64,000 bases of DNA from Ylistrum balloti (taxonomy: Eukaryota): NCBI RefSeq assembly GCF_031769215.1, contig NW_026782212.1, forward strand, positions 620,001-684,000, given 5' to 3'. How positions within the stretch are numbered: the stretch's first letter is position 1; each line of letters opens with the position of its first letter. This document shows, in pieces, positions 1-60,089 of the stretch. Both the position numbers and the translations under genes were made by a program. Under the pieces are notes generated by a model. That model was not told the DNA's origin. It did not search any database and was given only the letters and a program-made list of their open reading frames with translations.

Positions 1-200
1 TCATTTTTTTCTGGAAGATATGATAGAGTTTTCACTTTTAGTGAACATTCTTTCAGGAAGACAAGATTTCACAATCCCGAACAAGTCATTGTTGCAGGAA
101 GACTCGGTAAGACTCGTAATTTACAATATAATAATCTGTCACTCGTACCGCCATACCTCCAATCTCACCTTGAAGGGTGTCAGAGAGACATAATATATCT

Positions 201-738
201 ATCCCCAAGGTAGTCAGTGTTTCAGGGAGACAGGATACAACTATCCCCAAGGTAGTCAGTGTTTCAGGGAGACAGGATACAACTATCCCCAAGGTAGTCA
301 GTGTTTCAGGGAGACAGGATACAACTATCCCCAAGGTAGTCAGTGTTTCAGGGAGACAGGATACAACTATCTCCAAGGTAGTCAGTGTTTCAGGGAGACA
401 GGATACAACTCTCCTCTATTTATTCATTTTTTTAGGGATATGGAATACAACTATCCCCAAGGTAGTCATTGTTTCAGGGAGATTTGGGACAACTATCCCC
501 AAGGTAGTCAGTGTTTCAGGGAGACAGAATACAACTATCCCCAAGATAGTCAGTGTTTTAGGGAGATGGGATACAACTATCCCCAAGGTAGTCAGTGTTT
601 TAGGGAGACGGGATACAACTATCCCCAAGGTAGTCAGTGTTTCAGGGAGACGGGATACAACTATTCCCAAGGTAGTCAGTGTTTCAGGGAGATTTGGGAC
701 AACTATCCCCAAGGTAGTCAGTGTTTTAGGGAGATGTG
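201..738. repeat. 42-bp minisatellite (~13 units)
   Basis: Unit ATCCCCAAGGTAGTCAGTGTTTCAGGGAGACAGGATACAACT recurs at 201, 243, 285, 327, 369, then 453 onward; 411-452 is a diverged unit still in register. Explains the 14-aa-periodic ORFs. Confidence 0.97.
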
Positions 739-9029: not shown

Positions 9030-9600
9030 ACTCCTATTGTAAAATAAGCGACAGGGAGTTAGGATACACAAAGTAACAGTGAGTCAGGATTCATAGGGCA
9101 ACAAATGATCAGGAAACTAAAGTAACTGTAAACCAGGATTAGATCAACAGTGAATAAGGACAAATAAAGCAGGGGTGAATTAGGACACAGAGGGCAACAG
9201 CGAATTAGGACATATGAAGTAACAGTGAGTAAGGACCACATAGGCCAACAGCGAATTAGGACACATAAAGTAACAGTGAGTAAGGACACATAAGCCAACA
9301 GCGAATTAGGACACATAAAGTAACAGTGAGTAAGGACACATAAGCCAACAGCGAATTAGGACACATAAAGTAACAGTGAGTAAGGACACATAAGCCAACA
9401 GCGAATTAGGACACATAAAGTAACAGTGAGTAAGGACACATAAGCCAACAGCGAATTAGGATACATAAAGTAACAGTGAGTAAGGACACATAAGCCAACA
9501 GCGAATTAGGACACATAAAGTAACAGTGAGTAAGGACACATAAGCCAACAGCGAATTAGGACACATAAAGTAACAGTGAGTAAGGACACATATATAAAGA
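9030..9600. repeat. 50-bp minisatellite built from two 25-bp subunits
   Basis: GCGAATTAGGACACATAAAGTAACAGTGAGTAAGGACACATAAGCCAACA at 9251, 9301, 9351, 9401, 9451, 9501, 9551, with degenerate units upstream. Confidence 0.96.
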
Positions 9601-9639
9601 CAATTGACAATTGGGATCGTAAGGTTACAGGACACATAA

Positions 9640-10540
9640 AGTAATAATGAAACAGTTATATTGAACCAGTGTACATCGAGTAACAGTGAATTAAGATATA
9701 TAGAGTAACAGTGAATTAAGATATATAGAGTAACAGTGAATTAAGATACATAGAGTAACAGTGAATTAAGATATATAGAGTAACAGTGAATTAAGATATA
9801 GAGTAATAATGAATTAAGATATAGAGTAACAATGAATTAAGATATAGAGTAACAATGAATTAAGATATATAGAGTAACAATGAATTAAGATATATAGGGT
9901 AACAATGAATTAAGATATATAGAGTAACAGTGAATTAAGATATATAAAGTAACAGTGAATTAAGATATATAGAGTAACAGTGAATTAAGATATATAGAGT
10001 AACAGTGAATTAAGATATATAGAGTAACAATGAATTAAGATATATAGAGTAACAGTGAATTAAGATATATAGAGTAACAGTGAATTAAGATATATAGAGT
10101 AACAGTGAATTAAGATATATAGAGTAACAATGAATTAAGATATATAGAGTAAGAATGAATATGGGACTCATAGAGAAACAGTGAATTAAGATATATAGAG
10201 TAACAGTGAATTAAGATATATAGAGTAACAGTGAATTAAGATATATAGAGCAACAGTGAATTAAGATACATAGAGCAACAGTGAATTAAGATATATAGAG
10301 TAACAATGAATTAAGATATATAGAGTAACAATGAATACGGGACACTTAGAGAAACAGTGAATTAATATATATACAGTAACAGTGAATTAATATTTATAGA
10401 GTAACAGTGAATTAATATATATAGAGTAACAGATAATTAAGATATATAGAGTAACAATAAATACGGGACACATAGAGCAACAGAGAATTAAGATATATAG
10501 AGTAACAGGGATTCAGTATACATAGAGAGCAACAGAAAGT
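9640..10540. repeat. 25-bp minisatellite (~35 units)
   Basis: GTAACAGTGAATTAAGATATATAGA with period 25 (e.g. 9730, 9755), with 23-bp variants and decayed edges. Confidence 0.96.
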
Positions 10541-11499
10541 TAGAATACATAAAGAGACACCGAATCAGCATACGTAGAGTTACAGTGCATTAGAATACAC
10601 AAAATTACAGTCAGTCAAGACACAAGAAATGATATACACAGAGAAATCAATTATGTTTTTGCATAAAACCAGAACACATGACATCAGACTTAACCTTAAA
10701 TCGAGCCTTATATCGATATTGAAAAAGTATGTGTGACCCATATCAGGCAGGGTAAAATTGTACATAATTTGATGTGCGGAATGGATTTTTCTGTCAAATT
10801 ACGATCAGGCACCAGTAGATTTCATCAAGATAAACCAATCAATATCATTTTAACGTACATTTATCGTTTCTGTCTTTGACCACACAACTTCATATCTATC
10901 AAAAGTTTATATGTTACAAATGTCTGTCTATTAGCAAATGTTTCGCGTGAACAAAGTTTAGACGTTGTGTAATAAAGTATAGAAATATAATCACGTCTCT
11001 TTAACATTTCGGCGACAGATAAATCAATCCTGTTATTTATGATGTACTGAAATGAGAGGTATACAATATATTACAATTAATGATATTCGATATTTGTGAC
11101 AAATACTATGAACAATTTTGACACACAGAAAGTATATAAACCCACAACAACATTGAACTTAAGTGTACTAAGCCCTTTACTATGAATATCAGTGATTAGA
11201 AGCGATAAACATAAAACGGTGTTGAATCAAATTCGTGTCTTTGTACAAAAGACACACAAGGGAAAAGCACATTCTGATACAATGTGTGTATTCGTGCCAC
11301 TAATCGAATGAAGTGAAATTTGTAATTACTGTTGTCATTGCGACGTCATAGCGTCGTGGTACCATGTGCATTGTGACGTCATCAAAGAAAGTGATATATA
11401 ATGCGACTATAGCCCATGTAAAGTTTGTGTTAATTTGCTGAAAAAACGACAATAAGATACCAATATGTCAAAATGACCGTAATTCAAACTCAAACCTCA

Positions 11500-23966: not shown

Positions 23967-25806
23967 CAGTGATAGTTATAATAATCTTTTTAAAAAGGGG
24001 GCAAAAATATCAAGAAAGTACTAATACAGTACCATAATCGGAAGTCAAATTCCATAAACTATGGTAAAATATGATCAAAAGATGTTTCTTTACCGTAGAT
24101 CGGCAACAGTTTGTATCATCAGATTAACATTCTAGATGTTTTAACACAAAGTGTTAATGGACATGGTATAGGTATTCAACTACTTTCATATTCGAGTCAA
24201 AGTCAACAAAAATGACTCGAATATGACTGCAGCTAATGATTTGATATTTAACATGCAATGTTACGAAAAACGTCTGGGACTAAAAATATTCTACACAACA
24301 AACTTTACCATTTTACAAACTATTTTTAAATTAACATTTTCAATTCTTAGTAAAGAATATGTTCGGCTTAAAATTCCCTTTTTCCTGTATTTCTATGTCC
24401 AGGTTTGTTAACCCCTGTCGACCTTTGTTTTGTTTCCCAAATCATGCTAAACATTAACACACGTATGTTGTGCTATACTTAGAGTTGTTGTATAACTAGA
24501 TATTTAACACAACATACGGTGTTAATGTATTTGAATCTTAACCACTGTTACCGTCTAGAAGCTACAGATATGACACTAAACCGTTCTTAACTCTGGGTTG
24601 TTTCATGTATCAGGCAACGTTACTGCAAACACCTCTCAATTCCACGACAATATGTACATTTATCACGGAGGAAAACTAAACAATCCATTTAATGAGATTA
24701 CTTTCGTCGCATCTTTCGGATTCGAATTCGCTCCTGCGAAGACAGACTTTATATAATGTTTCAGATCAATACGGCTCTATCTCAGGGGATTCTGCTGTAT
24801 ATATATATTCACTACGCTTTGGTTTGATAAAATTTCAACCTAGGCGATAAGGCTTGAACAGATTAATTTACTCTATAGTTTATTAAGTGTTTAGTTCCCC
24901 AGACCAGCATAGATTTAAAGAAGCATAATGATTTGTGTTTGAGACACAAGACCAATAGATATAGCGCTTCTGACTTTTATCCATGTCAAAGACAATGCTC
25001 TCCAGAAAAAAAGTATTTTCTATCGTATCAATATTATACAACCATATATGATACAGAATAAGCTGATATATTCGTTTTAGAATTGGTAACTGTTCTCCTG
25101 AGGAAATCTAGTATCACCAACCGAACGGGAGACGAAACATTGCCAAGACTCAGATCAGTCTATCATCTGTAAGCTGCAGGCTAGAGCCCGTTTCGGTAAT
25201 TCATATTGTTAACTTTCAGGTATTGTTTTAAGAACGTAGTGCTAAAGACTGATTTTACATATTTCTATGAAACATTTTGAAGAATGAAATGTAATAATTG
25301 TGAAAGTTGCTGTCGGTAGAGACATTAAAACTATGTAAAACATTTAGTTAGTAAAAAGGAATGAGAATGGAATGAATGGGTCAATGAAAGGGAATTCGCT
25401 TTTAAATTGTTGTCCTTTCCTCGCTTTATTGCAAAATAAATTTATCATTCGTTCATGAAAAAGTGATCCGTGTGTGGTATATTATATAGCAAACGTCAGT
25501 CCGATCTCTACAAGAAACAGATGTTTCAAGGTCAATATGTAGGTTTATCCTCAGTATCACATATTTGATCATTTGAAGAAGTATATCCATGTATCTTTTT
25601 ATTGTTTTATCACGTTTGCAATATACCGTGACTAACTTTCCGTCACCTCAACCACAGGAGTTTAATTCATAAGTTTAAGACGTAACGTCACACAAGTTCT
25701 TTGTTCCATGAGGCAACATTTCGGAGCTGGAAAAAACGTGGTAATATTTATGGTAATTCAACAATGTAAACAAGCAGACCTAGCTGTAAGAGTTGTCTCA
25801 AAGGAG

Positions 25807-34149: not shown

Positions 34150-36305
34150 ACACGACTTTATCTATCATAACACAATGATATATATCATAATACAACACTT
34201 CGATCTACGTATCCTCTATCACAACACTTTGGTGTAAACTTTCTCTATCACATTCGGCGTACGTTTCTTATCACAACATCTCATATATTTTCACTCACAA
34301 CACCTCGGTGTATACATTTTCTTTCTCAAGATATCGATGGGTTTTTTTAATCAAAACTTCTTGGTTTACATTCTCTAAGAGCACAATTCGGTTTGTATTC
34401 TCTATCAAAACACCTCGATACATATATATCCATCACAGTTTATATATGTGTGTAATCTCTACCACAACACCTCGGTTGATATTCTCTACCACAACACCTC
34501 GGATTATATTCTCTCACACAACACCTCGGATTAGATTCCCTACCAAAACACTTCGGATTAGATTCTCTACCACAACACCTCGCATTATATTCTCTACCAC
34601 AACACCTCGGTTATCTTCTATCACAACTCCTCAGTTTATCTTCTCTATCACAACACCTTAGTTTATCTTCTCTATCACAACACTTCGTTTATATTCTCTA
34701 CCACAACACCTCGGTTTATCTTCTCTATCACAACACCTCAGTTTATCTTCTCTATCACAACACTTCGGTTATATTCTCTACCACAACACTTCAGTTTATC
34801 TTCTCTATCACAACACCTCGGTTATATTCTCTATCACAACACCTCAGTTTATCTTCTCTGTCACAACACTTCGGTTATATTCTCTACCACAACACCTCAG
34901 TTTATCTTCTCTATCACAACACCTCAGTTTATCTTCTCTATCACAACACTTCGGTTATATTCTCTACCACAACACCTCAGTTTATCTTCTCTATCACAAC
35001 ACCTCGGTTATATTCTCTATCACAACACCTCAGTTTATCTTCTCTGTCACAACACTTCGGTTATATTCTCTACCACAACACCTCGGTTTATCTTCTCTAT
35101 CACAACACCTCAGTTTATTTTCTCTATCACAACACCTCAGTTTATCTTCTCTATCACAACACCTCAGTTTATTTTCTCTATCACAACACTTCGGTTATAT
35201 TCTCTATCAAAACACCTCAGTTTATCTTCTCTATCACAACACCTCAGTTTATCTTCTCTATCACAACACCTCAGTTTATCTTCTCTATCACAACACCTCG
35301 GTTTATCTTCTCTATCACAACACTTCAGTTTATTTTCTCTATCACAACACCTCAGTTTATCTTCTCTATCACAACACCTCAGTTTATCTTCTCTGTCACA
35401 ACACTTCGGTTATATTCTCTACCACAACACCTCGGTTTATCTTCTCTATCACAACACCTCAGTTTATTTTCTCTATCACAACACCTCAGTTTATCTTCTC
35501 TATCACAACACCTCAGTTTATTTTCTCTATCACAACACTTCGGTTATATTCTCTATCAAAACACCTCAGTTTATCTTCTCTATCACAACACCTCAGTTTA
35601 TCTTCTCTATCACAACACCTCAGTTTATCTTCTCTATCACAACACCTCGGTTTATCTTCTCTATCACAACACCTCAGTTTATTTTCTCTATCACAACACC
35701 TCAGTTTATCTTCTCTATCACAACACCTCAGTTTATCTTCTCTATCACAACACCTCAGTTTATCTTCTCTATCACAACACTTCGGTTATATTCTCTATCA
35801 CAACACCTCAGTTTATCTTCTCTATCACAACACCTCAGTGTATCTTCTCTATCACAACACCTCGGTTTATCTTCTCTATCACAACACCTCAGTTTATTTT
35901 CTCTATCACAACACCTCAGTTTATCTTCTCTATCACAACACCTCAGTTTATCTTCTCTATCACAACACCTCAGTTTATATTCTCTATCACAACACCACGC
36001 ATTATATTCTCCAACACAACACCTTGGTTTCTATTCTGTATCACAAAACCTTAGATTATCTTTTCCATCACAACACCTCGGTTTATATTCTCTATCACAA
36101 CACCTCGGATTATATTTTCCATCACAACACCTCGGTTTATCTTCTCTATCACAACACCTCGGATTATATTCTCTATCACAACATCTCGGTTTATATTCTC
36201 CAACACAACACCTCAGATTATATTTTCCATCACAACATCTCAGTTTATATTCTCCAACACAACACCTCGGATTATTATCTCTATCACAACACCTCGGTTT
36301 ATATT
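34150..36305. repeat. 27-bp minisatellite (~75 units) with higher-order repeats
   Basis: TTCTCTATCACAACACCTCAGTTTATC, period 27 (35221, 35248); 26-bp variants interspersed; degenerate at both edges. Confidence 0.97.
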
Positions 36306-37364: not shown

Positions 37365-37985
37365 TTTACAGTGATGAGGTCAAATTATTTTGTATTTTCA
37401 CAGTGATGTGGTCGACTTATGTTGGATTTTCACAGTGATGTGGTCGACTTATTTTTGATATTAAAAGTGATGTGGTCGACTTATTTTGGATTTTCACAGT
37501 GATGTGGTCGACTTATTTTGGATTTTCACAGTGATGTGGTCGACTTATTTTGGATTTTCACAGTGATGTGGTCGACTTATTTTTGATATTAAAAGTGATG
37601 TGGTCGACTTATTTTGGATTTTCACAGTGATGTGGTCGACTTATTTTTGATATTAAAAGTGATGTGGTCGACTTATTTTGGATTTTCACAGTGATGTGGT
37701 CGACTTATTTTTGATATTAAAAGTGATGTGGTCGAGTTATTTCGGTGTTTACAGTGATGTGGTCGAGTTATGTGGGTGTTTACGGTAATGTGGTCGAGTT
37801 ATTTGGGTGTTTACAGTAATGTGGTCGAGCTATTTGGATGCTCACTCTGAAGTGGTCGAAGTATTGTGGGTGTTTACATTGATGTGGTCGAAGTATTAGA
37901 ATATTTACGGGTTATTAAGGCATCCACAGTGATGTGGTCGACTTATTTGGGTGTTTACAGTGATGTGGTCAAGTTAGTTGGATAT
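37365..37985. repeat. 32-bp minisatellite (~18 units) with three unit variants
   Basis: (C/A)AGTGATGTGGTCGACTTATTTT followed by GGATTTTCA or TGATATTAA; GTCGAG variants in the 3' part. Confidence 0.95.
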
Positions 37986-38745: not shown

Positions 38746-39659
38746 CATGTTCCATTGCCATTCCGTGACTCGGATGGTGGACATCATTCGTGCTGGGAAA
38801 TTTATCAATGACGAGTCCAGTTTTCGTCATATCAAATTAGCTAGGAGACATATCGGTATAATATGGCCTTGTTACATAGAGTTAGCATTGATGTATTTGA
38901 AATTGAGGCCATCAAAGTCTACCCGTCGCCGAACGACTATTATTTGGAATAATGTAGATGATACATTAAAGCAAAGCATGTCTGCTACCAGACAATTAAA
39001 TCTGGGGTTCAATATCATATCCCTAAGTATACATGACTTTAAGTTTTATCTCACATCCACTCTAGTCTAACAACCATTCTAGTTGAAGGCAAGTATCGCT
39101 TATTGTAAATGATCGAAAAATCAAAATAGTTTTGGTTCACTTACAGATAAATTCGATTGTTAATTTTCATGAGTGAAATACGAGACGAGTTTCGGTATCT
39201 CAGTATAACGTGCCAGCGGGTTGATGTTTAACATTTCCACCCACATAATTGGACGGAAAATCTGTATCTAAATCGGAGTACCCAAAGTGGTTAACATCAG
39301 AACTCGAAAATACATTTAATCTATTTAAGATATAATCATTTATTGTCCTTTGTGGAACTTTTACGTCTTTCGTTCAAATAATAAGTGTACTCTCTGAACA
39401 TTATGATAAATAGAAATGAACGTTTTTATTTCATAACTCTCCAGTTATCAGTGTAATAAAACCCATTACAGGAATTATGGCCATATATGTACTTACACCT
39501 AACGGAGCAGTTTTTGGCTAAATGTTCCCGTAGTTTGAATCTTGACGTCATACCTTTGTGACGCCAAATGCATTATGACTTCACGAACCAGAGAGATATG
39601 GCATGATACTTTCAAATATTAAGATTAAATGAGTCTATGTTATGAATGACGTTTCAATA

Positions 39660-39894
39660 AGTACATGCTACACTTAAAAGATATTCATTAATGAACATAA
39701 AATGGAAATGTTTGATTCTGGATGAGTAAGATACACATGTAGTTGACGTCCTTCTAACATGATCAGATATACGATATACACGAAATGTACTGAATTATGG
39801 GTCAAGTGCACCTCCCCAACTAGGTTCTGTCATTGTTTTTCTATAACATTGGGTTTTCATCAGTCGCTTCATAGGTTAGGGATTTGTGTCCATA
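39660..39894 (+). mobile_element. hammerhead-bearing repeat family, copy A, 5' body
   Basis: TGGAT..ATACACATGTAGTTGACG (39719-39748) and TTGGGTTTTCATCAGTCGCTTC (39849-39870) match copy B on the minus strand (the latter 17/22). Confidence 0.7.
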
Positions 39895-40164
39895 ATATCA
39901 CTATCGAGTCCTGGAAGGACGAAACAACTATATGATGTAACATCACTGTCGAGTCCTGGAAGAACGAAACAGCTGTGTGATGTAGCATCACTGTCGAGTC
40001 CTGGAAGGGCGAAACAACTGTATTGATGTAGCATCACTGTCGAGTCCTGGAAGGGCGAAACAACTGCATGATGTAGCATCACTGTCGAGTCCTGGAAGGG
40101 CGAAACAACTGCATGATGTAGCATCACTGTCGAGTCCTGAAAGGACGAAACAACTGTATGATAT
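39895..40164 (+). ncRNA. tandem array of six 45-bp minimal type I hammerhead ribozyme-like motifs (core variant, probably inactive)
   Basis: Unit GCATCA-CTGTCGA-GTCC-TGGAA-GG(A/G)C-GAAAC-A(A/G)CT-GTA-TGATGT gives stem I 5', core, stem II, GAAA, stem III, NUH and stem I 3'. All units have A6U; cores start at 39901, 39946, 39991, 40037, 40082, 40127. Confidence 0.8.
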
Positions 40165-42227
40165 ATTAAATTCATTCAATGGCACTACAACACATTATTT
40201 TAATTTATATTTTCCAAATATGCTATTCAGTTGTGTGTCTTTTATACAAACTTGTATGTTTACAGTTCGTCTTTAAGACTAAGGTGTATGCATTATGCCA
40301 ACTTTTAACACGAAACTTTCATGTTTTGCTTTCCTAATGTTATCGAATTGTTATTTTTTTACAGTCTGTATTGTGTGTCCCCTTCTAAACCACTAAACTG
40401 CATGTGTTAAGCCTGAACAAGAACATGTATTAAACTATGAAAACTTAAAACGAAACAAAGTTTAAGAAAATTGGTAACTTAGTCTTTATACGTAAATATT
40501 TAAAATACAGTAGTGAATGAACAATCCGTACTAGCAAAATTCTTTAAACTTTTTATAAATATAACATTCACGCACTCAGTTCGATCGACCTAAGAGGTCT
40601 TGAGAAATAGCTTCTCTCTACAGCCAACAATTATTTCAATTTCTGTGGTTCCATTTAGGTAGCCATTTTTATAGTATGACAATGGCCTTTGTAACTTACG
40701 ATTGCAACTACTCGAAGACACCTCTTGGATAGTAATTAATCTGGTTTGCCAAACCATTCTGGGATATTTTAGCTTAGAGCAAGGCACTGATCAGCATTTG
40801 GGTGTCGTTAGCAGTCAATATCTCAAGGTATTACACGTGACCAAGTTATATTGATAGAGGCCAGGCCCTTGGCGGTAGTTTGGCCTTCATTTGGTGAGAT
40901 ATAGCCTGTTAATGAGAATATAATCAACAGTTTTATTACCAAAATAATCATGACTGTTATAGGAAAGTGCACCACTGACCAGAATAAAGAGACAACGTAC
41001 AGTAAAGATTTTGTACAAAAAGTATATGTGATGACAACTATTGCAACTAAGTCAGCCTCTTAGGAAAATCTGACACTGTACACGAAAACGACGCGTCAAC
41101 AAGGACCACAACACATTAATGATAGATTATTATCGGTTAAGATGACTATTCTAAGATAAACATTCATGTAAAGATACAAGGGTGATATATGAGAGACATG
41201 CAAACTGTTCAATTAACTAAACTATACACATGAGCATACATGAATCACTATACAAGTCATTAAATTACTGAAGATATTCATACATGCTTTAAGTAAAGAT
41301 ATCAAAAATAGTCATTTCAATACTTAAAAAAGATTCAAATCACGAAAATATTGTATCATACGAATCAATGAATCTGTGATGCACATTGATGTCAATGATA
41401 ATATTTCATTGTTAAGTTCTTGTCGAAACGCATTGATCTTTAGGGAAATTTAAACAAGATGGTTTTGAATCGATGCATAAAACTTGACAGAGTTTTCTAT
41501 GTGTGACAATTCTTCACTTTTATCAAACACAATTTTATCCGAATTCAAAAATGTTTTCTCGCAAACGTATACATGCTGTTTTCACGCATGGAGCCTAAGT
41601 AATTACAATATGCATATCTGAATGTGTTATAAGTGCTGTATAGGATACAAATTAATACGAAAAGATGAATAGTTACAATGTGTATGTTCTCATTTAAAGA
41701 AAATGAAAATGTTGTGCTTGGTGCGAGGAGGCGAGATCATACCCTAACATTCGACAATAAGCTCGAGAACTGGATATATTCATCATTCTTGCTCTTTATC
41801 CCATGTGAATTATAATGCGAACATGTTTGATGAAAAACAAAGTACATATTGCCCGAAATTTCCTGAAATGTGTATTAAACCTCGACTAATATTTTTTTTT
41901 TATCACAACTCGTCCCTTCGATATGTCAAAAAGAAAGACCAATATCAGAGAGGAGAAATTGACATTTCAATTCTTTTTTTTCTGCTCTGAATTAATGCTA
42001 AAAATAGCTACGCATTCGTTCAAGATTACCGTATTTCGATTAACTCAAACCCTCTTACTCTCAAAGCAAGCATTCAAGAAGACCTATTAAGCATTCTACA
42101 CCTCGAACAATGTACTTCTTAAATTAATATAACAATATTCGATCTTTAGGGGATTTATTTCAGGAGAAGTATTGCTATCTGAACGCATCTTATCATCGAT
42201 ACGTGGGATACCTATCTTTTGTAAACT

Positions 42228-42271
42228 GCGTCATACAGCTGTTTTGTCCTTCTAGGACTCGTCAGTGATAC
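42228..42271 (-). ncRNA. minimal type I hammerhead ribozyme motif, copy B (G12A lesion)
   Basis: Minus strand: GTATCA-CTGACGA-GTCC-TAGAA-GGAC-AAAAC-AGCT-GTA-TGACGC; palindromic helix III ACAGCTGT and GUA site. Confidence 0.82.
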
Positions 42272-42729: not shown

Positions 42730-44135
42730 TCGCAACATTATTATCTTAATCCAATATATTCCCTTTTGATACTCCAAGAGATCCTGCTATCAGTTCCATT
42801 TTATCTTACACAGGTTCCCAATGTCATATTCTTTTCCTAATCAAAACAATTTCTCTTTTCAGCTTCGGTAAACACTGCAGTTTTCTTCGTTTGGATCTTG
42901 TTATTCCACTCTCACTTATCGAGTGGATCCTGCTGTATCATTCCAATGGATGTTGCCGTGTCTCTTCTGTGGATCCTCCTTCCTAATTCCAAACGAGATT
43001 ACCTTGTTTCTCTAGTGGGTCCTCCTTCCCAATTCCAAACGAGATTACCTTGTTTCTCTAGTGGGTCCTCCTTCCCAATTCCAAACGAGATTACCTTGTT
43101 TCTCTAGTGGGTCCTCCTTCCCAATTCCAAACGAGATTACCTTGTTTCTCTAGTGAGTCCTCCTTCCCAGTTCCAAACGAGATTACCTTGTTTCTCTAGT
43201 GGGTCCTCCTTCCTAATTCCAAACGAGATTACCTTGTTTCTCTAGTGGGTCCTCCTTCCCAATTCCAAACGAGATTACCTTGTTTCTCCAGTGGGTCCTC
43301 CTTCCAAATTCCAAACGAGATTACCTTGTTTCTCCCATGGATCCTTCTGTCAAATTCCAAACGAGATTACTTTGTTTCTCTAGTGGATCCTCCTTCCCAG
43401 TTCCAAACGAGATTACCTTGTTTCTCTAGTGGGTCCTCCTTCCCAATTCCAAACGAGATTACCTTGTTTCTCCCATGGATCCTTCTGTCAAATTCCAAAC
43501 GAGATTACCTTGTTTCTCTAATGGGTCCTCCTGTCAAATTCCAAACGAGATTGCTGTGTCTCTGCTGTGAATCCTCTGCCCAATTCGGATGAAGATTGCC
43601 GTGTTTCCCCTGCTGATCCCACCCGCCAAATTGCGATGGAGATTGCCTTGTCTCTCCTGTAGATCTGCCTGTCTAATTTCATTGGAGATTGCCTTGTCTC
43701 TATTGTAGATCTGCCTGTCTAATTTCATTGGAGATTGCCTTGTCTCTCCTGTAGATCTGCCTGTCTAATTTCATTGGAGATTGCCTTGTCTCTCCTGTGG
43801 ATCTGCCTGTCTAATTCCATTGGAGATTGCCTTGTCTCTCCTCTCTCCTGAGGATCTTCTTGTCCAATTCCGATTGAGATTGCCTTGTTTCCCCTGTATA
43901 TCCTCCTGTCCAATTCCGATTGAGATTGCCTTGTTTCCCCTGTATATCCTCCTGTCCAATTCCGATTGAGATTGCCTTGTTTCCCCTGTGGATCCTCCTG
44001 TCCAATTCCGATTGAGATTGCCTTGTTTCCCCTGTGGATCCTCCTGTCCAATTCCAATGGAGATTACCTTGTCTCTCCCTTGGATCCTCATTTCTAATTC
44101 CGAAAGGAGATTGCCTTGTCTCTCCTGTGGGATCA
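42730..44135. repeat. 46-bp minisatellite (~28 units) with three sequence domains
   Basis: AATTCCAAACGAGATTACCTTGTTTCTCTAGTGGGTCCTCCTTCCC (43031, 43077) grading into AATTCCGATTGAGATTGCCTTGTTTCCCCTGTATATCCTCCTGTCC (43866, 43912). Confidence 0.96.
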
Positions 44136-46994
44136 TATGCTAACTTGTAGCAGCTATCAGTCTGAAGACAAAAGAAAAAGGTCTACTATCAAGAAATTGG
44201 CATAAATAGGTATCGCACTGAAGTGATTCTCTCATTCCCTTTATAGGTTCATACTCTTTTTTTCTGTCATAAGGATTCGTTCGATAATTTCATTTGTCAC
44301 TCATATGCCCTACGCTTAATGAAACAGAACGATAACACAATCTTACTGGTGTATTGACACTGAAATAGATTGACGTCCTTCCCATGCTTCGCATAAAATA
44401 GTAAATATAAGAGTTGACAGACACTACTATTAACAATCCCTAGTGTCTGTTAGTATCATAAATCATCCATTCATCCTTGCTTCCTTCAGATATTTACCCA
44501 ATACGACATTGTCTGACCCGCCGTGGCTTGCACAGAATTGTCTTTTCTTTTAAGTTCAGCTTTAGATTAATTCGTTGAATGTAATTCAAGGAAAGTGATT
44601 GCTAAACTTTCTGTCTGGAGTAATCTGTCGACTCTCCCTTTGATAGTATTTGTCAGTACCGAAGAAAAAAGTAGAACAATGTTAAGGGTTACTGTAATTG
44701 GGACAGTATAATTTTTCATTACAACGTTTATCATGACATCGATAACCGGAGTCAAAATAAAACATAAATTGTACAGTATCGCATCGCTGACCTGTTTCGT
44801 CATTATAAGAGGTGTGAGTCGAGTCTTATATTAAACCTGAAAGGCGAATTCTTAAAATCAATATTGATGACAGGATGACTGAATCTAGATTAGAAGGTGT
44901 ATTAGTCTCAAAGTTAAAAAAAATCATAATTTTAAATATCGCGTGATGCAGCTGATCCTCAATTAGGTAAGTAAGCTTCGGCCCATTGCAATAACCATTG
45001 TCCAAATTCTTTTTCCATCCAATGTGTAGTAGCAATATCGGAAGGAACCATTCACACGATTGTTTATATAGTCACGTGCTGTTATAGGGACTCTTTCGCA
45101 ACACCTGGCCAGACATCATCGCGAGACAAAGGATCCCAAAGGAAATGACTGAAATAAATTACTAGGCGATAAGGGACTGTGAAGTTGAAAGATCTTCAAG
45201 TTAGTACCTATTTTAGTTACATGACGTCACAAGGCTATCAGACTGCAGAAAATCTACCACAGAGTGTAGTATTGTGATCGATTAAGGAAATAGATAATAC
45301 AATCTGTAGCTACAAATGTTCATCCTCTCAATTATTTTAAGAAGTCGATATTGTATTTTAAGGATAATTGAACTAATATAGACTTTTCGAGGATTTCTTA
45401 ACGTTTTACGTCGTTGTAGTATCAGTACAACATAAAAAAGGTATAGACAAAACAGACCATTTATCAGAATCAAGAGTCCTCTTAATATGCTTTAGAAAAA
45501 ATCTCTGCTTTTGTATCTCAGATATGGTTGGGGCAATACTGCAAAATAAAAACGGTAAGACTTGCTAAATTAGGTATCAGTTTACGAGGGAATTGGTGCT
45601 TATTTTTCCGCCTTTGACATGTATTTCGACAAAGGGAAGCAACACAATAGAAATATTTAAATTAATTCAAAGCCTCATTAAATTGAACATAGTTTTAAAC
45701 GTTATTCAAAATACAAAGAAATGATTTACTTCATGGCAGCTAACAAAACATGTCAACTTTTAGATGTAAGTACACGTTAGTGTGGACAAGTGAGAAAAAG
45801 TCGATATATTGCCACACTGTAGAGTGTATTTGTCGGTTAGATGAGCAGCAAAGAAAACACGATCATTTGTCACAACCCCGAGCCAAAACTGTCAAAAACA
45901 ATAACACATACTAGTAATATAGCAATGTCTTGTTTTTACTTTGTATATATTAAAGTTTGAATCGATATTTAACGGTTCGGAAATGGAATGTTAGAAACCG
46001 TTCTGCACTGCATGTAAGTTATAAATGTGTCTCATTCACTGAGTTTTATAACGCATCTGCATAAATATCATAACGTTTCCAAGTCATGTAGAGCATACAT
46101 ATTGCGCACTGCAAACATTTGTTTTCAGCATGTAATGGACATTAGTTTACTGTATTTAAAGTGGTAGATAAAATTACAACAATGATTGCCAAAAAGAAAT
46201 CTTAAGTTGTTCGGTTTTATTGACTTCTTAAGAAGTTTCATTCAATTTTGTTTACTTTATTATTTAATAAACCCAATAGAACACGACGTAATTAATAAAC
46301 GTTTTATATTAAGCTTACCATGTGTTATATAGTTTCATTGCGTAACAAAATAAACAAACAAAAAATTATGAATTAAGATTTTCACCATATATCATTTTGA
46401 AAAAGAGGTAATATGTGCATCTGTCATATAGATGTCTTTACCTTGTGTGTAGTTTATGAATTTTTCGTTTTTCTGACGTCAATGCATATTTTTCAATAAT
46501 CATTAAAAGACAGAAAGACTCTGTCTACATAAATAAAGTTACCAAGGAGAAACACAATCACTAGCGAAATACTTGTCGAATCATATTTCTCTTACGATAA
46601 TTGAATATTATCCATCCTACAGAGAAGCTAGTATTTAACATAAATTGCGTTTCACGTTATCTCTGTTGTCTAATTACACAAATAACAACATGGTCATGAC
46701 ATATATACTTGTGTGACGATAGATGTGGCAGCATTTTTGGCTTGACCTCCTCCCATCCCCTCTGCGCAAGAACTAGTTCGTTGATCCCCAATGATATGCC
46801 GACTAAGACAACATTGACCCGCATCAACGTCCATTATGAATAAATAACAATGACAGGAATTCACACGCTCTGTTGTCTGCCCTGGTTCGCATCACATCTA
46901 CTTGACAGGGAACCTTTTATGTACTTAAACAGCGGAAACAGACACCTGCGTTTTCTGCACTTTTTACAAAATAATTAAGCCCTGTAACTTTACT

Positions 46995-47270
46995 ATGTTA
47001 TATCCTACCACTTCACTTTTGCTATTTTGTCTCTCATGTTCCACATCAGTTATGTCACTTAATCTCTGTTGCGCTCTACCAGTTCACCTCTGTATTTTCT
47101 TCTCAAACGTTCCACACAAGTTAAGCTCTTCCAATTCATCTGTGTTGTATCCGGCCACCTCACTTCTGCTATTTTATCTCTCACGTTCCACTGCAATTAA
47201 GCTCTTTGAGTTCATCTGTTTGTTTCCTACCACTTCACTCTGTCATTTCCCCTTTCACGTTCCATAAAAA
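46995..47270. repeat. degenerate pyrimidine-rich repeat
   Basis: CCTACCACTTCACT..GCTATTTT.TCTCTCA.GTTCCAC recurs near 47003, 47155 and partly 47226. Confidence 0.55.
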
Positions 47271-50200
47271 TTAGCTCTGTTATACCTTGCATTGTCTCTT
47301 TGCATTTGCTATGTCTATCTTTCTGCCATTCCCTCACACTATGACCTCTTCTTTGGTGTCCGCCTTTAAATTTAAACTTGTAATTACGGTAAAGTTGTTT
47401 TGTTACTTATTTGTTTTTGAACGTCATTATCTAACTGATAACACTAAAGAAATACAACACATATGGATGGTTGATTAATGTATGTAATGCAGTAATGGAA
47501 TTTAATGGTTAATCTTCTTGTTACATATGTAAAATGCACATGATATTGATATCTTCTATTTTTCTCAAAAAATATTTAATTTTTTTCTGTAATTGTCAAT
47601 ATCACTTTTTTTCTTTCAGTTATATTGTTGACTAGTCCCATTAGTTTCATATTTTGACCAAAGTGCTTGTAAATATTTTTTGAAAGTTTGTCATACCAAT
47701 TTGCACCGAATACTATTTGTTTATTCCTCATGGGAGCCCCCTACACCGAGTAAGGCCGGCAAGACAGACCTCTTTAGAAGAATATTAAACCTATATTTGT
47801 AGCCGCTGGGAGCCACTTGTGTCATATATCCTTGTATATCTATGAATACTGGTCGGCAAATAGACCGATATGATATATGGGCTTGGTTTCCTTAGCAACA
47901 GTGATAGATCCTTGTATTAAAGCATTGATATTCTATTTAAGATTGTAACATCTTTTGCAATTAATACTATACATTACTTTAATTGTGCAAATGTAACTCG
48001 GTTTTGTATCCAGTACAAAAAACTAAATCTACACGGAAAAACATTCCTGAATTTTGAAACAACATAGTAAAGTGTACTTCAAATACATTTTTAAAAAATC
48101 TTTTGAACTCGTTTTCTAGTATTTTAATTCTTTATTTGAGGTTCTATTTGTGTAATGTGTTCATTGAAAGGAGCTATATTCTCTGGTTTCTACGCTCTTT
48201 AAGGACAATACTCTCGATACTCATTCATGATTTGGAAATATAGTCATTATATCTACAGGATTGATATTAGAAGATTACCATACAGAGCATGCCAAGCTCA
48301 TTAATATACAGACAGCCATCCATTATAGACAGTTAAGCATATGTGTTAGGCATTGTCATTTGGAGTTTTGATTTATTGCAGAATCAAAAACGGGGTAAGG
48401 TTCGTGATAAATTCTCCACAGAAGAATCGTTTTCATTGTCAAATACTATTGATTTAGTGTATATTGAGCGTTCTTTAATTTGATATCTTTCTGATCAATT
48501 TCTAAAAAGCCTTCCCATATTCTGAAAGATAAAACAAATCATTTGTGGAATGTATCGGAACTGTTAAATAATCTAATATACAACTGTACTACAGTTCTCC
48601 AAGGAAAGTCAATAATTCTATATTTATTTATGGAGTTTGCTCGGTAAGGCACATATACTAATTGACATATCAGATGACACAGTCGAGGTTTACAGCCAAG
48701 ACGAATATAGTAATGAATTCAAAGCCGTATGTATATACTGTACCTATATTGTATAAACTAATACACACTAATTTTTTTTTTACCATTTACTTGTCCAGAA
48801 ATTATTTAAATTATTTCAGTGACTTGTAAATACGTGTACAGATGTATTTAGATACGAGGATGGCATGCAAAATCATAATGTAAAGTAAAAGACCTTGGGA
48901 GTACTGAATGCAATTTGTATGCGACTGTAGCTAATTTGTTATTTGCATGGTGATATATTTGAAGGCAGCATTTTGATCTCCGCAGTAGCAGAGTAACATA
49001 AATGCATGTCGTTTTGCAAGGCCACTAATTACCGTGTCTACAGTAAGACCAATACTGTCTGACGCCGACAGTCATTTACAGGATCTCACGAGCAGCAAGT
49101 GGACGTGTTTTAACATTTCTATGGATAACGTACGTCTGTGGGAAAGTTAACGCACAGACGGAGGGAATATGAATAATATTAATGCAATTGCTCCGTACTT
49201 TTCTTGTAATCAACCATTTTGTGTTATTGTCTGGGGCTATGATAAACGGTTCACGATTTATTTTATTGGACGACAGTTTGGAAATGTCGAGTAGGTCTCT
49301 TGCTACATAGAATGGATTAGCTAGCAAGCATATGCCTTCTCTTTTCAATATATTTTCATGGCTTGTAAAGCTATACTTTGGCGTTTCCAGCCCAAGGTGT
49401 GTGCATGAATATTGAAGTTAATGTGGAATACTTCTAAGCCACTATACGTTATGAACAGAAAAGCAGATTAGGACAATAAAACTGTCAACATTCTGTCGCT
49501 CATATGTACAATATGGTGTAATTTGTTCGGGACGAAAATCAAATATCGTTGCCGTTTAGGCAGCAACTATATATGATACACACTTGGTTGTTAACCTTGC
49601 ACAACCTCGTGATCAAATTGAAAAAAAAAGAAGAAAAAAAGAGAAAGTCAAATCGGCTCAGTATCATTCTTGTAATATTCACCTTGGCAATAAACGTGTG
49701 ATGAATAATGTTCTATCCAATTGTACTATACAAACACAGTACCATCAACATGCCGACTTTGCAACCTGAACTAAATGTTACATTTCCTTTGCTCGTAAAT
49801 CTTTCTGAAAAACTCCATTTGTTGGCTACATAATGTTCATAGTTCGAGTGTTAACCTATTTCAGATAAGTAAGTGCTGTTGAATCAAAGTTGTTTGATAT
49901 AAAATATAGTTTCTCAGAACTGGGAAAATAGAGCAACGCTTTTCTGACAAATACTATCGATAATATCATAATTCTGAAAGCAGCGATGTAATTTGCACTT
50001 GAATAAATAACAGTATTTCTATGAGATTTATCATTATTATTATTTATTTGATATACAATATGACATAAAATATGTCAATAATACATATACAATAGGTTGT
50101 CTAAATCGAAAAATTTGTGTTGTGTATTCAGTCGTCAAACTATCGCTTATAACTGCAGTATCTCCAAGAGGGAACTTATTTGTTATTCTACAATGTATGT

Positions 50201-54200: not shown

Positions 54201-55406
54201 AATGTTTTGTGTGCAATATGTAATACAAAGCAAGTGATTTAAAGTGTATCTTTGGTTTTAAAACATTAATCGCGTAATGAATGTATACACCAGCAAAGAA
54301 AAATGACTGTTAGGTTGGAAATAAACCCTCGAAAATATGCGCCAATTTTGATGTTGAATAGACAGTGCTTTTAGATAATAGTAACTTGCTAGTTCATTGA
54401 ACTTTTCTATTTCATTGCAAATGAAAATGGATTATTGCGACTGTCGATCAAATGATAAGGTAAAAGAATGTCACAAATGTAAAAAAAAAATGAAACATGG
54501 ATTAAAAAATCAATATAGACAAAAGCTGCATTTAATCTTATGATAACATTTCTATATGTGACATTTGAAAATAATAATATTTTGAGAAGGTGTTGCGATC
54601 TATGAGAAACGCCTGTTTCATTCATCAAGCAAGTAACAGTGAACTTTTCTCGAAAATGATTGTAGCTTAAATGATAGCAGTCGGGAGGACTTATAGAATA
54701 TCAAAACAAATAAATGTTCAGTATGAATTCAGGGTTTTTTTATCAAGCTGGTACATCATATTACATTGGTGATTGGTGTTTGGAGCGATATTAAGCTATA
54801 TTGAAAATGGACCAAATGAATGACATTCAGTCGGCGTAGTCTTACTTTTGACAAGCTAGAGCCTGCAAAACAGTTATCGAATTTCTCATTTTTCATCTGT
54901 ATCCTTTTCAAAGTATGTCTATCAACTCACAATAATGACGCTCTAATAACTGAGTGTACATGCCATGTCATTTTCCTTTGTTTTATTATATACTACCTTG
55001 ATGTATATTTTGATCGTAATGACAGTTTTGATATAACAGTGCCGTTGATATGTGGTATCAATAAACAATCCATGTTTAGTTGTGAAATTTGTATTCCTTG
55101 TGTTTGTTCTAAGTGATAATTTATATACAATCGAAAAGGCTCTACAAGGCTTTGTCCTAATACCAAATTAATGTATTGGGTTGAACAACGTAATAATGTT
55201 ATTGAAAACGTATTCCAAAATTATTTATTTATTCATCTATTCACTTATCCAGAATTATTTCGAATATTAACAAGTGGTAAACGTTTTTACATTTTGATTC
55301 AAATTCATAAAATTTGTACGGATGGCAAAAGAGACATACAATTGAAAAGCATCTATCAAAAAACTTTAGATCAAAAAAACAGTAGCGACAAACAGTGAAC
55401 GAAACT

Positions 55407-55450
55407 GCAACATAGAGCGGTTTCGTCCTTCAAGGACACTTCAGTGACGC
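55407..55450 (-). ncRNA. minimal type I hammerhead ribozyme motif, copy C (A9U and G16.2C lesions)
   Basis: Minus strand: GCGTCA-CTGAAGT-GTCC-TTGAA-GGAC-GAAAC-CGCT-CTA-TGTTGC. Confidence 0.72.
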
Positions 55451-57869: not shown

Positions 57870-57989
57870 TTATGTATTCATCATACTGCATCATATCGTC
57901 ATTTCGTTTTGTAAGGTTGTGTTATGCTAGTCTTTTTAACTGTGGAACATAGTCTTTCAAGGATCTTATTTATTTCTTTCTACAGCAAT

Positions 57990-58365
57990 CCAGTGCCCCT
58001 GACATACCCTGTAGTGTCAGATACGTCAGATACCTGTTATATATAGTTGTAAAGTAAAATACAGTATCCTAACATACTCTGTAGTGTCAGATACCAGTTA
58101 TATATAGTTGTAAAGTAGAATACAGTGTCCTGACAAACCCTGTAGTGTTAGATACGTCAGATACCTGTTATATATAGTACTAAAGTAGAATACAGTCTCT
58201 GACATACCCTGTAGTGTCAGATACCTGTTATATACAGTTGTAAAGTAGAATACAGTGCCTCAAACATACTCCGTAGTGTCAGATACGTCAGATACGAGTT
58301 ATATATAGTTGTAAAGTAGAATACAGTGTCTTTTACATACTCTGTAGCGTCAGATACCAGTTGTA
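57990..58365. repeat. minisatellite with alternating ~70/~61-bp units
   Basis: GTAG(T/C)GT(C/T)AGATAC anchors at 58011, 58081, 58142, 58211, 58273, 58344. Confidence 0.92.
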
Positions 58366-60089
58366 TGAAGTCATCATCGGTATCTTCATTGATCGTGGTA
58401 TTTCAGATCGTTACTGTGTGTGTAAGACCTACACGTATCCTTACCACAATACAGTTACTCCTGCTACCAACAGAAAACACAAACTACATTAAGACATTCA
58501 TACATTATTTCAGATATCAGCTGAAACGTTAGACATCATTGTATTATAAGGAAACATTGTTTACCTTCAGCGTCATATGCTGACATCTGCTGGTACACAA
58601 AACCATTATTACATCCATAGACGGAAGTCCAAAAATTATATTATTAAGTCAAAACACAAAAATCGTTATCGTGCAGCTCTCTTGTACCGTATTTATTACT
58701 TGTTATGTGATACCAACGACCATGAAGAGTTCTGTACTCCGACGGGATTACGAAGTGTCAAATTAAGACTTCAGAAAAAATTATAGTTACATTACTTCTA
58801 TGCAGGATCCATTGTTTTTGCCTCAGGACACAGTAAATTTGTTCAGTTGACAGTATGGCGCAGGTGTTTGTCTAACGTCATCATATTTGTAAAATTGTGT
58901 TTCTTATCAGTTGTCTCTGATAGGAAAAGACGAGTGTTAAGATATATTTGGTGGATATCATTATACAAACTCCACATTGCATAACAATGAGGACAAATCA
59001 TGTTAAACGACACATGCACAGTCTAAAATAGATTCTGATGCCAAACAACAGATGCACAGTATTAGACAGAATGTGCTACACGGAATGACTGATGTACAGT
59101 ACGACAGTATAACACATAAATTCAGACAATATTTTAAGAATAAACTATATGTACTTATATACAGTGAGACAGACATACAGTTTAAGACAGAATTTGAAGA
59201 TTAAACTATTGCTGTACAGTATAAACACATGATCTTGACGACAGATGAATAGTATAAGGCAGATTCTGATGACAAAACAATGGATGTGTGTACAGTGTAA
59301 AACACTATGAAATCGATTCAGAGGATGAAATGGCAGACCTAAGACAAAACCTCGGATATCACATGTATGAGAAACAGTAGCAGCACTTAACATGTTTTTA
59401 ATGAATATCAATCATATGTGCGGATCATACATTATGGAAACTGTGTTTGTCAAGGAAAGCAAACAATTTATGAATGCATACGGAAACCGAAAAAGGACAA
59501 TTTTGGTCAACGATTATTCAAAGTGCAAAAAGTTCACAACCTTCACATATATACACACCTTACATTATATACAAGCTTAATTATGCTGAAAAAAGGCGAC
59601 TGAACAAACAGAATTATACTAATAAAGTGTTCGGTTTTGTTTCTGGAAAGTGTAAATAAGCAGTGGAGATGGTCATATGCCCCTGGCTAATCAGCTGTAA
59701 TGATGTTAGTGTAGTCTGTGGTTTGACGGGACCAACATGGTGACCTGACGGCTATACTAATCCGTATTGATAGCCAAGATCTTAAAGTGCAACTTAAAAG
59801 GCTTTAACGGATAACCTGTCATTATTGTTGGTTTCCTCATGTCTTTAACAGGTAGGGTCCTCAACGATTGTCTTTAAAACGTGTCAACATATGGTACATT
59901 TTATTGTGACGTCAATGCTGACTCTATTACAGCTCCCAAAACGTCTCTGCAGACACCAGTTAAAGTATTTGTTTTTCCTTGCCATCTTTCGGTAAAAAAT
60001 TAAATTGCCCTTTTCTGCCTTTTTGTTATATTCGTGACCATATTGGTAATGGCCATTCCTTCAATACGTTAGTACATTAATTCTATAAA

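What the first reader, a model, noticed from the sequence alone, without database searches (positions are those of the whole stretch)
39895..40164. A minisatellite whose 45-bp unit is a complete minimal hammerhead ribozyme motif
Seen: six tandem units, each in type I hammerhead order: stem I GCAUCA/UGAUGU (6 bp), core CUGUCGA, stem II GUCC/GG(A/G)C, GAAA, stem III AC/GU around a 4-nt loop, then NUH. Established: the canonical core is CUGANGA...GAAA...NUH; minimal hammerheads with a palindromic helix III occur in Penelope-like elements and metazoan retrozymes, where neighbouring copies can fold as dimers. Here the ribozyme itself is the repeat unit, with no spacer. All units share A6U. Unit 1 also has G5A, unit 2 has GUG, units 4-5 have GCA, and unit 6 (GUCC/GGAC, GUA) deviates only at A6. 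Inference: either a dead ribozyme amplified by slippage, or a multimeric self-processing RNA that would release ~45-nt monomers if A6U is tolerated.
Basis: partly seen in the sequence, partly recalled or inferred. Interest (0 to 1): 0.85.

Follow-up and report, generated by a model that had tools for sequence, protein, structure and literature searches.

The report
Decayed hammerhead-ribozyme minisatellite, 45-bp unit
Six head-to-tail copies of a 45-base hammerhead (self-cutting RNA) motif really are here, but every copy carries a change in the catalytic core and most carry a second one, so this is most likely a mobile element's ribozyme multiplied as plain DNA, one small dead example of a repeat already seen many times in this genome.

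Summary
Window 39895-40165 (+) holds 5.9 tandem units of 45 bp (one of 46). Each unit has the full type I hammerhead (HHR) order, with a single linker base between units. Rfam Hammerhead_1 matches three units below its gathering score (best 29.1 vs 34 bits).

All six units have U at core position 6. Four carry further damage: G5A, G17, and C16.1 twice. Five have lost the palindromic loop 3 that dimer folding needs.

The array replaces the single HHR at the 3' end of an old dispersed repeat of about 300 bp. Two other copies lie in the window (42227-42271 and 55406-55450, minus strand); each has one HHR, broken at a different place.

- **Growth without catalysis.** Units 4 and 5 are identical and both carry the uncleavable GCA site, so the latest duplication copied a dead unit.
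- **No sign of selection.** Core columns vary as often as the rest.
- **Abundance.** An independent DNA run shows the unit is massively repeated, and U6 appears to mark a whole subfamily.
- **Expression.** No RNA data were available.

Verdict: an HHR-derived minisatellite that grew at the DNA level. This scan already found 45-bp HHR arrays on other DNA of this genome, several better preserved. Published HHR repeats are 150-450 bp, so the spacer-less layout is a variant of a known kind.

The parts
39895..40165 (+). Six tandem hammerhead-like units (45, 45, 46, 45, 45, 45 nt), all with CUGUCGA or CUAUCGA (U6)
   Evidence: TRF; unit parse; Rfam RF00163 sub-threshold hits at 39940-39983, 40121-40164 and 39985-40029; model R1 hits
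39640..39894 (+). Upstream body of an old dispersed repeat copy whose terminal HHR became unit 1 of the array. Similarity to the other copies is weak.
   Evidence: MAFFT alignment A1. Local alignment to the 55.4-kb copy scores above all 300 shuffles (z=4.0); to the 42.2-kb copy only z=2.4. Bins 39769-39850 are 8-16 times deeper than the flanks in run X1.
40031..40120 (+). Units 4 and 5: identical, both with C16.1 (GCA, no A15.1-U16.1 pair). This is the most recent duplication.
   Evidence: Pairwise difference matrix, 0 differences
42227..42271 (-). Single HHR of a second copy of the dispersed repeat: intact CUGACGA and palindromic ACAGCUGU, but G12>A (GGACAAAAC)
   Evidence: R1 66.7 bits
42272..42520 (-). 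Upstream body of the second copy
   Evidence: 85-nt direct repeat at 72% with the third copy (family D7); local alignment z=6.3
55406..55450 (-). Single HHR of a third copy: CUGAAGU (A9>U), with the helix III palindrome broken
   Evidence: (I1, I2); R1 58.6 bits
55451..55740 (-). Upstream body of the third copy

Best explanation
This is a hammerhead-derived minisatellite. A non-autonomous dispersed repeat of about 300 bp, of the retrozyme or Penelope pseudo-LTR kind, ends in one minimal type I hammerhead: 6-bp helix I, 4-bp helix II, and a 2-bp helix III with a palindromic loop. That design works only as a dimer.

In this copy the 45-bp ribozyme segment, already carrying the A6-to-U change, was duplicated head to tail at the DNA level by replication slippage or unequal exchange. 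The array kept growing after its units were catalytically dead. It now drifts as neutral repeat DNA and most likely does nothing as a ribozyme.

Shown: the anatomy, the shared U6, the second hits, the duplication of a dead unit, the link to the dispersed family, and the abundance of the unit in an independent DNA run.

Inferred: the DNA-level mechanism, the loss of activity, and the U6 subfamily being amplified genome-wide.
For: - **Structure.** TRF finds a 45-bp array and Rfam type I hammerhead alignments cover the full model.
- **Damage in the core and cleavage site.** All six units have U6, and four also have G5A, G17 or C16.1.
- **Growth without catalysis.** Units 4 and 5 are identical and both have the non-NUH site GCA. 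Units 3-5 share G11.2. Shared derived changes therefore sit in adjacent blocks, as expected for stepwise duplication in place.
- **No purifying selection.** 3 of 13 core columns vary against 8 of 32 others.
- **Folding.** The active double-hammerhead fold of real neighbouring units is 9-14 kcal/mol above the minimum free energy fold. It is only 2.4 above for an A6 + AGCU consensus-like dimer. U6 adds a competing U4-G5-U6: A15.1-C15.2-A pairing.
- **Family link.** Unit 1 aligns with the single HHR of two other element copies, whose defects lie elsewhere (G12A; A9U), so the family ancestor was intact.
- **Repeat-prone genome.** At least seven other minisatellites of 25-71 bp lie in the same window.
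- **Non-autonomous.** Fourteen ORFs had no Pfam hit, so there is no reverse transcriptase nearby.
- **Literature.** Mutants of the CUGA U-turn had low activity in comprehensive mutagenesis (PMC9901934). A natural A6C hammerhead had kobs under 0.1 per min (PMC3088659). Minimal Penelope-type hammerheads cleave poorly even when intact and dimeric (PMC4209133).
Against: - No RNA data could be obtained. The only run found is DNA contigs, so transcription and cleavage are untested.
- Changes at position 6 reduce activity but do not always abolish it (A6C).
- In run X1 none of the six U6 positions shows another letter at 10% or more of laid depth, while depth over the units is 10^3-10^4 times the flanks. 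U6 units therefore seem very numerous. That abundance could also mean U6 is tolerated.
- Units 3 and 6 have no core defect other than U6.
- The nearest-neighbour energy model ignores hammerhead tertiary contacts.
Confidence: 0.8

Rival explanations
1. The array was born at the RNA level. A 45-nt monomer, or a short multimer, was released by self-cleavage and circularised. It was then copied by rolling-circle reverse transcription into a tandem cDNA that integrated here, an ultra-small retrozyme. The ribozyme has since decayed.
For: Retrozyme tandem repeats are proposed to arise this way (PMC7229834; bioRxiv 10.64898/2026.07.22.740005). Earlier scan notes report 45-bp arrays at many other loci of this genome. 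Many different flanks are attached to the unit in run X1.
Against: - Unit 1 continues the upstream element body exactly where the other copies have their single HHR, as expected for expansion in place and not for insertion of a foreign multimer.
- Shared mutations lie in adjacent blocks, and the newest duplication copied a unit with a dead cleavage site.
- U6 is shared by all units, so the founding unit would itself have needed to cleave with U6.
- Published retrozyme circles are 170-400 nt.
Confidence: 0.1
2. The U6 hammerhead is a working, or weakly working, variant. Array transcripts fold with neighbouring units into double hammerheads: helix III forms between adjacent ACAxCUGU segments and helix I forms as the junction hairpin UGAUG-UAG-CAUCA. 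Cleavage then releases monomers of about 45 nt.
For: U6 appears to be the majority letter among thousands of similar contigs in an independent DNA run. A natural A6C variant keeps low activity. Units 3 and 6 are otherwise intact. The junction hairpin and helix II have helix lengths typical of loop-loop stabilised hammerheads (sequence).
Against: - Four of six units have additional disabling changes, and core columns vary as often as others.
- Five of six units lost the loop 3 palindrome, leaving a 3+3 bp helix III with two central mismatches.
- The active fold is 9-14 kcal/mol above the minimum free energy fold.
- U-turn mutants are low-activity.
- There is no expression evidence.
Confidence: 0.07
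3. The resemblance to a hammerhead is coincidental, and the repeat is an ordinary minisatellite with no ribozyme ancestry.
For: All Rfam scores are below the gathering threshold. No unit has a canonical core.
Against: Full-length alignment to RF00163 with E down to 5e-5. Two dispersed relatives carry the canonical CUGACGA or an intact GAAAC, so the family consensus is a complete hammerhead. The same core plus helix II string with A6 occurs in bona fide hammerheads of unrelated metagenome contigs.
Confidence: 0.02

Closest known systems
Metazoan non-LTR retrozymes (tandem genomic repeats carrying type I hammerheads; coral, mussel, axolotl)
   Same: Same hammerhead design: type I, 6-bp helix I, 4-bp helix II, very short helix III with a palindromic loop. 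Both are tandem in the genome, non-coding, AT-rich and found in invertebrates, with links to dispersed monomer copies (PMC7229834; PMC4209133).
   Different: Retrozyme units are 150-450 bp and carry a long, highly paired spacer that forms the 170-400-nt circle. Here the unit is the 45-nt ribozyme alone with one linker base. Here the core is mutated in every unit, and no RNA evidence exists.
Minimal hammerheads of Penelope-like element pseudo-LTRs
   Same: Small type I motifs with a diminished, palindromic helix III that are expected to act as dimers. They are extremely numerous and variable within a genome, and have low activity in vitro (PMC4209133; PMC6765202).
   Different: No reverse transcriptase or GIY-YIG ORF was found within the window. 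The PLE motifs described have longer helix II (6-8 bp) and shorter helix I. They are not reported as spacer-less 45-bp arrays.
Hammerhead-bearing satellite DNAs (newt satellite 2, Schistosoma Sm-alpha, cave cricket pDo500)
   Same: Tandem DNA repeats whose transcripts contain a type I hammerhead with a weak helix III, active as dimers (Forster 1988 and Ferbeyre 1998 as cited; my own knowledge for the cricket).
   Different: Those monomers are about 330 bp or more, and the hammerhead is a small part of the unit. Their ribozymes are active.
Natural core variant A6C hammerhead of phage Bcep176
   Same: Substitution at core position 6 in a natural sequence (PMC3088659).
   Different: That one is a different base in a single tertiary-stabilised ribozyme. 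It was assayed, with kobs under 0.1 per min. U6 here is untested and sits in a minimal motif.

Membership tests
Hammerhead ribozyme, type I (Rfam RF00163) | Order stem I / CUGANGA / stem II / GAAA / stem III / H17 / stem I around a three-way junction | tested here: met
   Parse of all six units; cmscan alignments cover model positions 1-45
Hammerhead ribozyme, type I (Rfam RF00163) | Conserved core C3 U4 G5 A6 N7 G8 A9 | tested here: not met
   U6 in all six units; unit 1 also has A5
Hammerhead ribozyme, type I (Rfam RF00163) | G12 A13 A14, the A15.1-U16.1 pair, and H17 not G | tested here: inconclusive
   GAA is intact in all six. The pair and H17 are intact in units 1, 3 and 6, but unit 2 has G17 and units 4-5 have C16.1.
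Hammerhead ribozyme, type I (Rfam RF00163) | Score at or above Rfam's gathering threshold (34 bits) | tested here: not met
   Best scores 29.1, 27.3 and 16.8 bits; no hit at gathering in the window
Hammerhead ribozyme, type I (Rfam RF00163) | Self-cleavage after position 17 | not testable with these tools
   Needs an in vitro transcription and cleavage assay
Metazoan non-LTR retrozyme | Tandem repeat unit of about 150-450 bp containing one type I hammerhead plus a structured spacer | tested here: not met
   The unit is 45-46 bp: ribozyme plus 1 nt. Size range from PMC7229834.
Metazoan non-LTR retrozyme | Expression as linear and circular RNAs of monomer size | not testable with these tools
   No RNA run holds the stretch; the only run is DNA contigs
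Metazoan non-LTR retrozyme | Non-coding and non-autonomous, with related dispersed monomers in the same genome | tested here: met
   No Pfam hit in 14 ORFs; two further single-HHR copies in the window
Penelope-like element pseudo-LTR | Hammerhead lies in a repeat flanking an RT / GIY-YIG ORF | tested here: not met
   No ORF of 120 aa or more near the array. ORFs of 75 aa or more in 36.5-58 kb have no Pfam match. A heavily decayed ORF could escape this test.

The most novel reading that the evidence does not exclude
Hammerheads with U at core position 6 form a large, still-propagating subfamily in this bivalve genome. Spacer-less 45-nt arrays are transcribed, fold pairwise into double hammerheads across unit junctions, and release monomers of about 45 nt (possibly circles). 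These would be the smallest retrozyme-like replicons known, and they would show that position 6 is not strictly required in vivo.
Probability: 0.06. Interest if true: 0.75.

Novelty: new variant of a known kind. Interest (0 to 1): 0.3.

Why it matters
Hammerhead-bearing tandem repeats in animals are described with units of 150-450 bp. In the current model they spread through circular RNAs that need the ribozyme. This locus shows that the 45-nt ribozyme alone can become a repeat unit, and that such an array keeps growing after the ribozyme is dead. That supports DNA-level satellite formation from mobile-element parts. It also warns that counts of hammerhead motifs in invertebrate genomes include many dead minisatellite units.

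As a single locus it adds little. The array is short and decayed, and the scan already holds better preserved arrays from the same genome. The one point worth following genome-wide is whether U6 marks a large amplified subfamily.

Tried and rejected
- **Rfam at gathering, whole window:** nothing. The canonical pattern CTGANGA...CGAAAC gave one match at 25098, at chance level and unrelated.
- **Coding reading:** two frames are open within a unit, but the 46-nt unit shifts the frame. The 99-aa ORF is a repeat artefact and no long ORF exists.
- **Bacterial-type promoter and terminator scan:** uninformative, fewer sites than in shuffles.
- **Reverse transcriptase relics:** 14 ORFs had no Pfam hit.
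- **More decayed copies:** my covariance model R1 with filters off found only the 8 known motifs; the next best hit was 13 bits.
- **A 34-nt BLAST hit of the downstream flank at 11240-11273:** no hammerhead next to it, so I dropped it.
- **Metagenome scan for the core plus helix II string with A or T at position 6:** two unrelated canonical A6 hammerheads and no U6 copy.
- **Expression:** the run search returned one DNA contig run and no RNA run, so expression could not be addressed.
- **Earlier findings:** word look-ups for A6U and CUGUCGA, and a look-up by sequence, returned nothing.
- **Literature:** Lunse et al. 2016 (PMC5785218) is not held. Searches for hammerhead with scallop or with minisatellite found no description of a spacer-less array.
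- **Upstream homology:** stringent BLAST and Smith-Waterman scoring did not support upstream homology of the array copy to the other two copies. Softer scoring supported it for one of them.

Full report
**What is there**

Window 39895-40165 on the + strand holds a tandem array. Tandem Repeats Finder reports period 45, 5.9 copies, 92% matches and no indels. In hammerhead register the units start at 39895, 39940, 39985, 40031, 40076 and 40121.

Each unit reads: six bases of stem I (GCAUCA), CUGUCGA, GUCC, a 5-nt loop, GGNC, GAA, A15.1 C15.2, a 4-nt loop, G16.2 U16.1, position 17, six bases of stem I (UGAUGU), and one linker A. The unit is therefore a complete minimal type I hammerhead plus one base.

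Rfam's Hammerhead_1 model aligns over its full length to three units, at 29.1, 27.3 and 16.8 bits. E-values are 5e-5, 1.9e-4 and 0.56 in a 701-nt search, and all are below the gathering score of 34. Nothing in the window reaches gathering. A 25-nt core pattern with up to three mismatches gives 7 matches against none in 100 shuffles.

**State of the units**

The full picture is below.

| Unit | Start | Length | Differences from the canonical hammerhead core and helices, and from the family's loop sequences |
|---|---|---|---|
| 1 | 39895 | 45 | U6; G5A; A at 16.2 (C.A mismatch in helix III); loop 3 AACU |
| 2 | 39940 | 45 | U6; G at position 17 (GUG); C.A mismatch in helix II (GAAC); keeps loop 3 AGCU |
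| 3 | 39985 | 46 | U6 only in the core; extra U after position 17; loop 3 AACU |
| 4 | 40031 | 45 | U6; C at 16.1 (GCA); loop 3 AACU |
| 5 | 40076 | 45 | U6; C at 16.1 (GCA); loop 3 AACU; identical to unit 4 |
| 6 | 40121 | 45 | U6 only in the core; C.A mismatch in stem I; loop 2 G to A; loop 3 AACU |

Five of six units thus have loop 3 AACU where the family has AGCU, the form that makes A-C-A-G-C-U-G-U a perfect palindrome.

Eleven of 45 columns vary among the units: 3 of 13 core or cleavage-site columns and 8 of 32 others. The core is not protected.

**Where it comes from**

Two further motifs lie on the minus strand.
- 42227-42271 has an intact CUGACGA and the perfect palindrome ACAGCUGU, but G12 has become A.
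- 55406-55450 has CUGAAGU (A9 to U) and a broken helix III.

A covariance model built from the eight motifs and run without filters finds no others in the 64 kb.

The two single copies share about 250-300 nt of upstream sequence: 85 nt at 72% without gaps, and a local alignment z of 6.3. The array's upstream flank aligns collinearly with them but weakly. Against the 55-kb copy it gives z=4.0, above all 300 shuffles. Against the 42-kb copy it gives only z=2.4.

The array therefore occupies the place of the single terminal hammerhead of an old dispersed repeat. Each of the three copies is broken at a different core position, so the ancestor was an intact hammerhead. No reverse transcriptase relic was found in 14 ORFs, so the element is non-autonomous.

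**How the array grew**

Units 4 and 5 are identical, and unit 3 differs from them by one substitution and one inserted base. Units 3-5 share G at 11.2, and units 4-5 share C16.1. Shared derived changes thus lie in adjacent blocks, which is the signature of stepwise local duplication.

The youngest duplication copied a unit that has U6 and also lacks both the A15.1-U16.1 pair and a cleavable NUH site. Growth therefore did not depend on catalysis.

The same window holds at least seven other minisatellites with periods of 25 to 71 bp, so this genome makes such arrays readily. The 2026 preprint on animal retrozymes describes the general route from Penelope pseudo-LTR to retrozyme to local tandem amplification by unequal crossover.

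**Would it work as a ribozyme?**

The design matches what Cervera and de la Pena call the canonical metazoan type I hammerhead: helix I of 6 bp, helix II of 4 bp, and helix III of 1-2 bp with a small palindromic loop. That design needs a second copy nearby to form an extended helix III (PMC4209133).

In a spacer-less array two neighbouring units can in principle form a nested double hammerhead. Helix III would form between the two ACAxCUGU segments. The inner helix I would be the junction hairpin UGAUG-UAG-CAUCA.

I evaluated that fold with ViennaRNA.

| Dimer | Active double-hammerhead fold above the minimum free energy fold |
|---|---|
| The five real neighbouring pairs | 9-14 kcal/mol |
| Array consensus | 7.8 kcal/mol |
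| Consensus-like dimer with A6 and AGCU | 2.4 kcal/mol |

Both array-specific changes hurt. AACU costs about 10 kcal/mol of helix III. U6 creates a competing U4-G5-U6: A15.1-C15.2-A pairing worth about 3.6 kcal/mol. These are model energies and ignore tertiary contacts.

On position 6 itself, comprehensive mutagenesis found low activity for single and double mutants of the CUGA U-turn, with no rescue except the C3-G8 swap (PMC9901934). A natural A6C hammerhead cleaved at less than 0.1 per min (PMC3088659). So U6 is expected to cripple the ribozyme, though not necessarily to abolish it completely. Even intact minimal Penelope-type hammerheads cleave poorly as dimers.

**Evidence from another data set**

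One public run (X1, DNA contigs, organism coded) holds the locus. Its contigs cover both flanks at depth 8-9 with about 1-2% differences. They break inside the array, and one 75-nt contig matches 39979-40053 exactly.

Over the units, 2342 contigs were laid at 88% identity or more. Summed depth there is 6e3 to 4e5, so the unit is extremely repeated in that genome. Only four array positions show another letter in at least 10% of depth. Two of them restore canonical features: 39963 A>G gives GGAC, and 40067 C>T gives GUA.

None of the six U6 positions is listed. Among close relatives of this unit U6 therefore appears to be the rule. A6 copies do exist, in clipped ends such as CATCACTGACGAGTCC. 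I read this as U6 marking an amplified subfamily. The tool warns that depth is not copy number, and clipping could hide some A6 copies, so this remains an inference.

No RNA run was found, so expression is unknown.

**Relation to earlier findings of the scan**

The scan has reported 45-bp hammerhead arrays on other pieces of this genome many times, with 8 to about 54 units. Some have mostly intact cores and others are mostly dead. Follow-up notes call the organism a bivalve or scallop, and one names Ylistrum balloti. I did not verify the organism.

One note reports three intronic copies without the canonical A6 (s1-244250). Another reports a 53-unit array in which nearly all units share a mutated catalytic base (s1-258766). 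Both fit the idea of abundant position-6 or other core variants, but I could not test them.

**Comparison with what is known**

Published hammerhead repeats in animals are 150-450 bp, with circular RNAs of 170-400 nt (PMC7229834). My literature searches found no spacer-less 45-bp hammerhead array. The layout is therefore a variant of a known kind, a retrozyme- or PLE-derived hammerhead satellite.

This instance fails the hammerhead core test (U6) and the Rfam threshold, so I file it as hammerhead-derived rather than as a hammerhead ribozyme.

A metagenome scan for the core plus helix II string, allowing A or T at position 6, found only two unrelated canonical A6 hammerheads.

**Verdict**

An RNA-level rolling-circle origin gets about 0.1. 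A working U6 ribozyme gets about 0.07.

Interest is low to moderate: a small, decayed example of a phenomenon already logged elsewhere in this genome. Whether U6 defines a large subfamily remains open.

Noticed in passing
window 180-734, 9145-10579, 34456-36302, 37368-37891, 42959-44130, 47088-47278, 57987-58366: The window is unusually rich in minisatellites: 42 bp x13, 25/50 bp x34, 27 bp x69, 32 bp x16, 46 bp x25, 76 bp x2.6 and 71/131 bp x5. None matched an Rfam family at gathering. The 27-bp array causes a GC skew of -0.6 in 34-36 kb.
   Followed up: partly
window 42824-44188: A 46-bp x25 array lies about 550 bp from the single hammerhead copy at 42227-42271. Its consensus has no hammerhead core, and my model R1 gave no hit there.
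   Followed up: partly
window 40220-40260: In run X1 this stretch is about 75 times deeper than the flanks, and several contigs join the end of a hammerhead unit directly to about 40221-40224. In other copies of the family the hammerhead is therefore followed at once by this sequence. The 56 nt at 40165-40220 may be an insertion or a decayed unit specific to this locus.
   Followed up: no
L001 1823-1847 and about 2127-2160 (metagenome contig Ga0233413_10000534): Two canonical hammerheads about 300 nt apart have the same helix II and loop 2 string (GUCC UGGAA GGAC) as the array unit. They flank a small ORF in what looks like a phage-like contig and are unrelated to the animal family. L002 holds a third in a GC-rich contig.
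   Followed up: no
window 39895-40165, unit junctions: Each junction UGAUG-UAG-CAUCA is a perfect 5-bp hairpin with a triloop. In DNA it forms a 13-bp near-palindrome every 45 bp, which might itself favour slippage.
   Followed up: no
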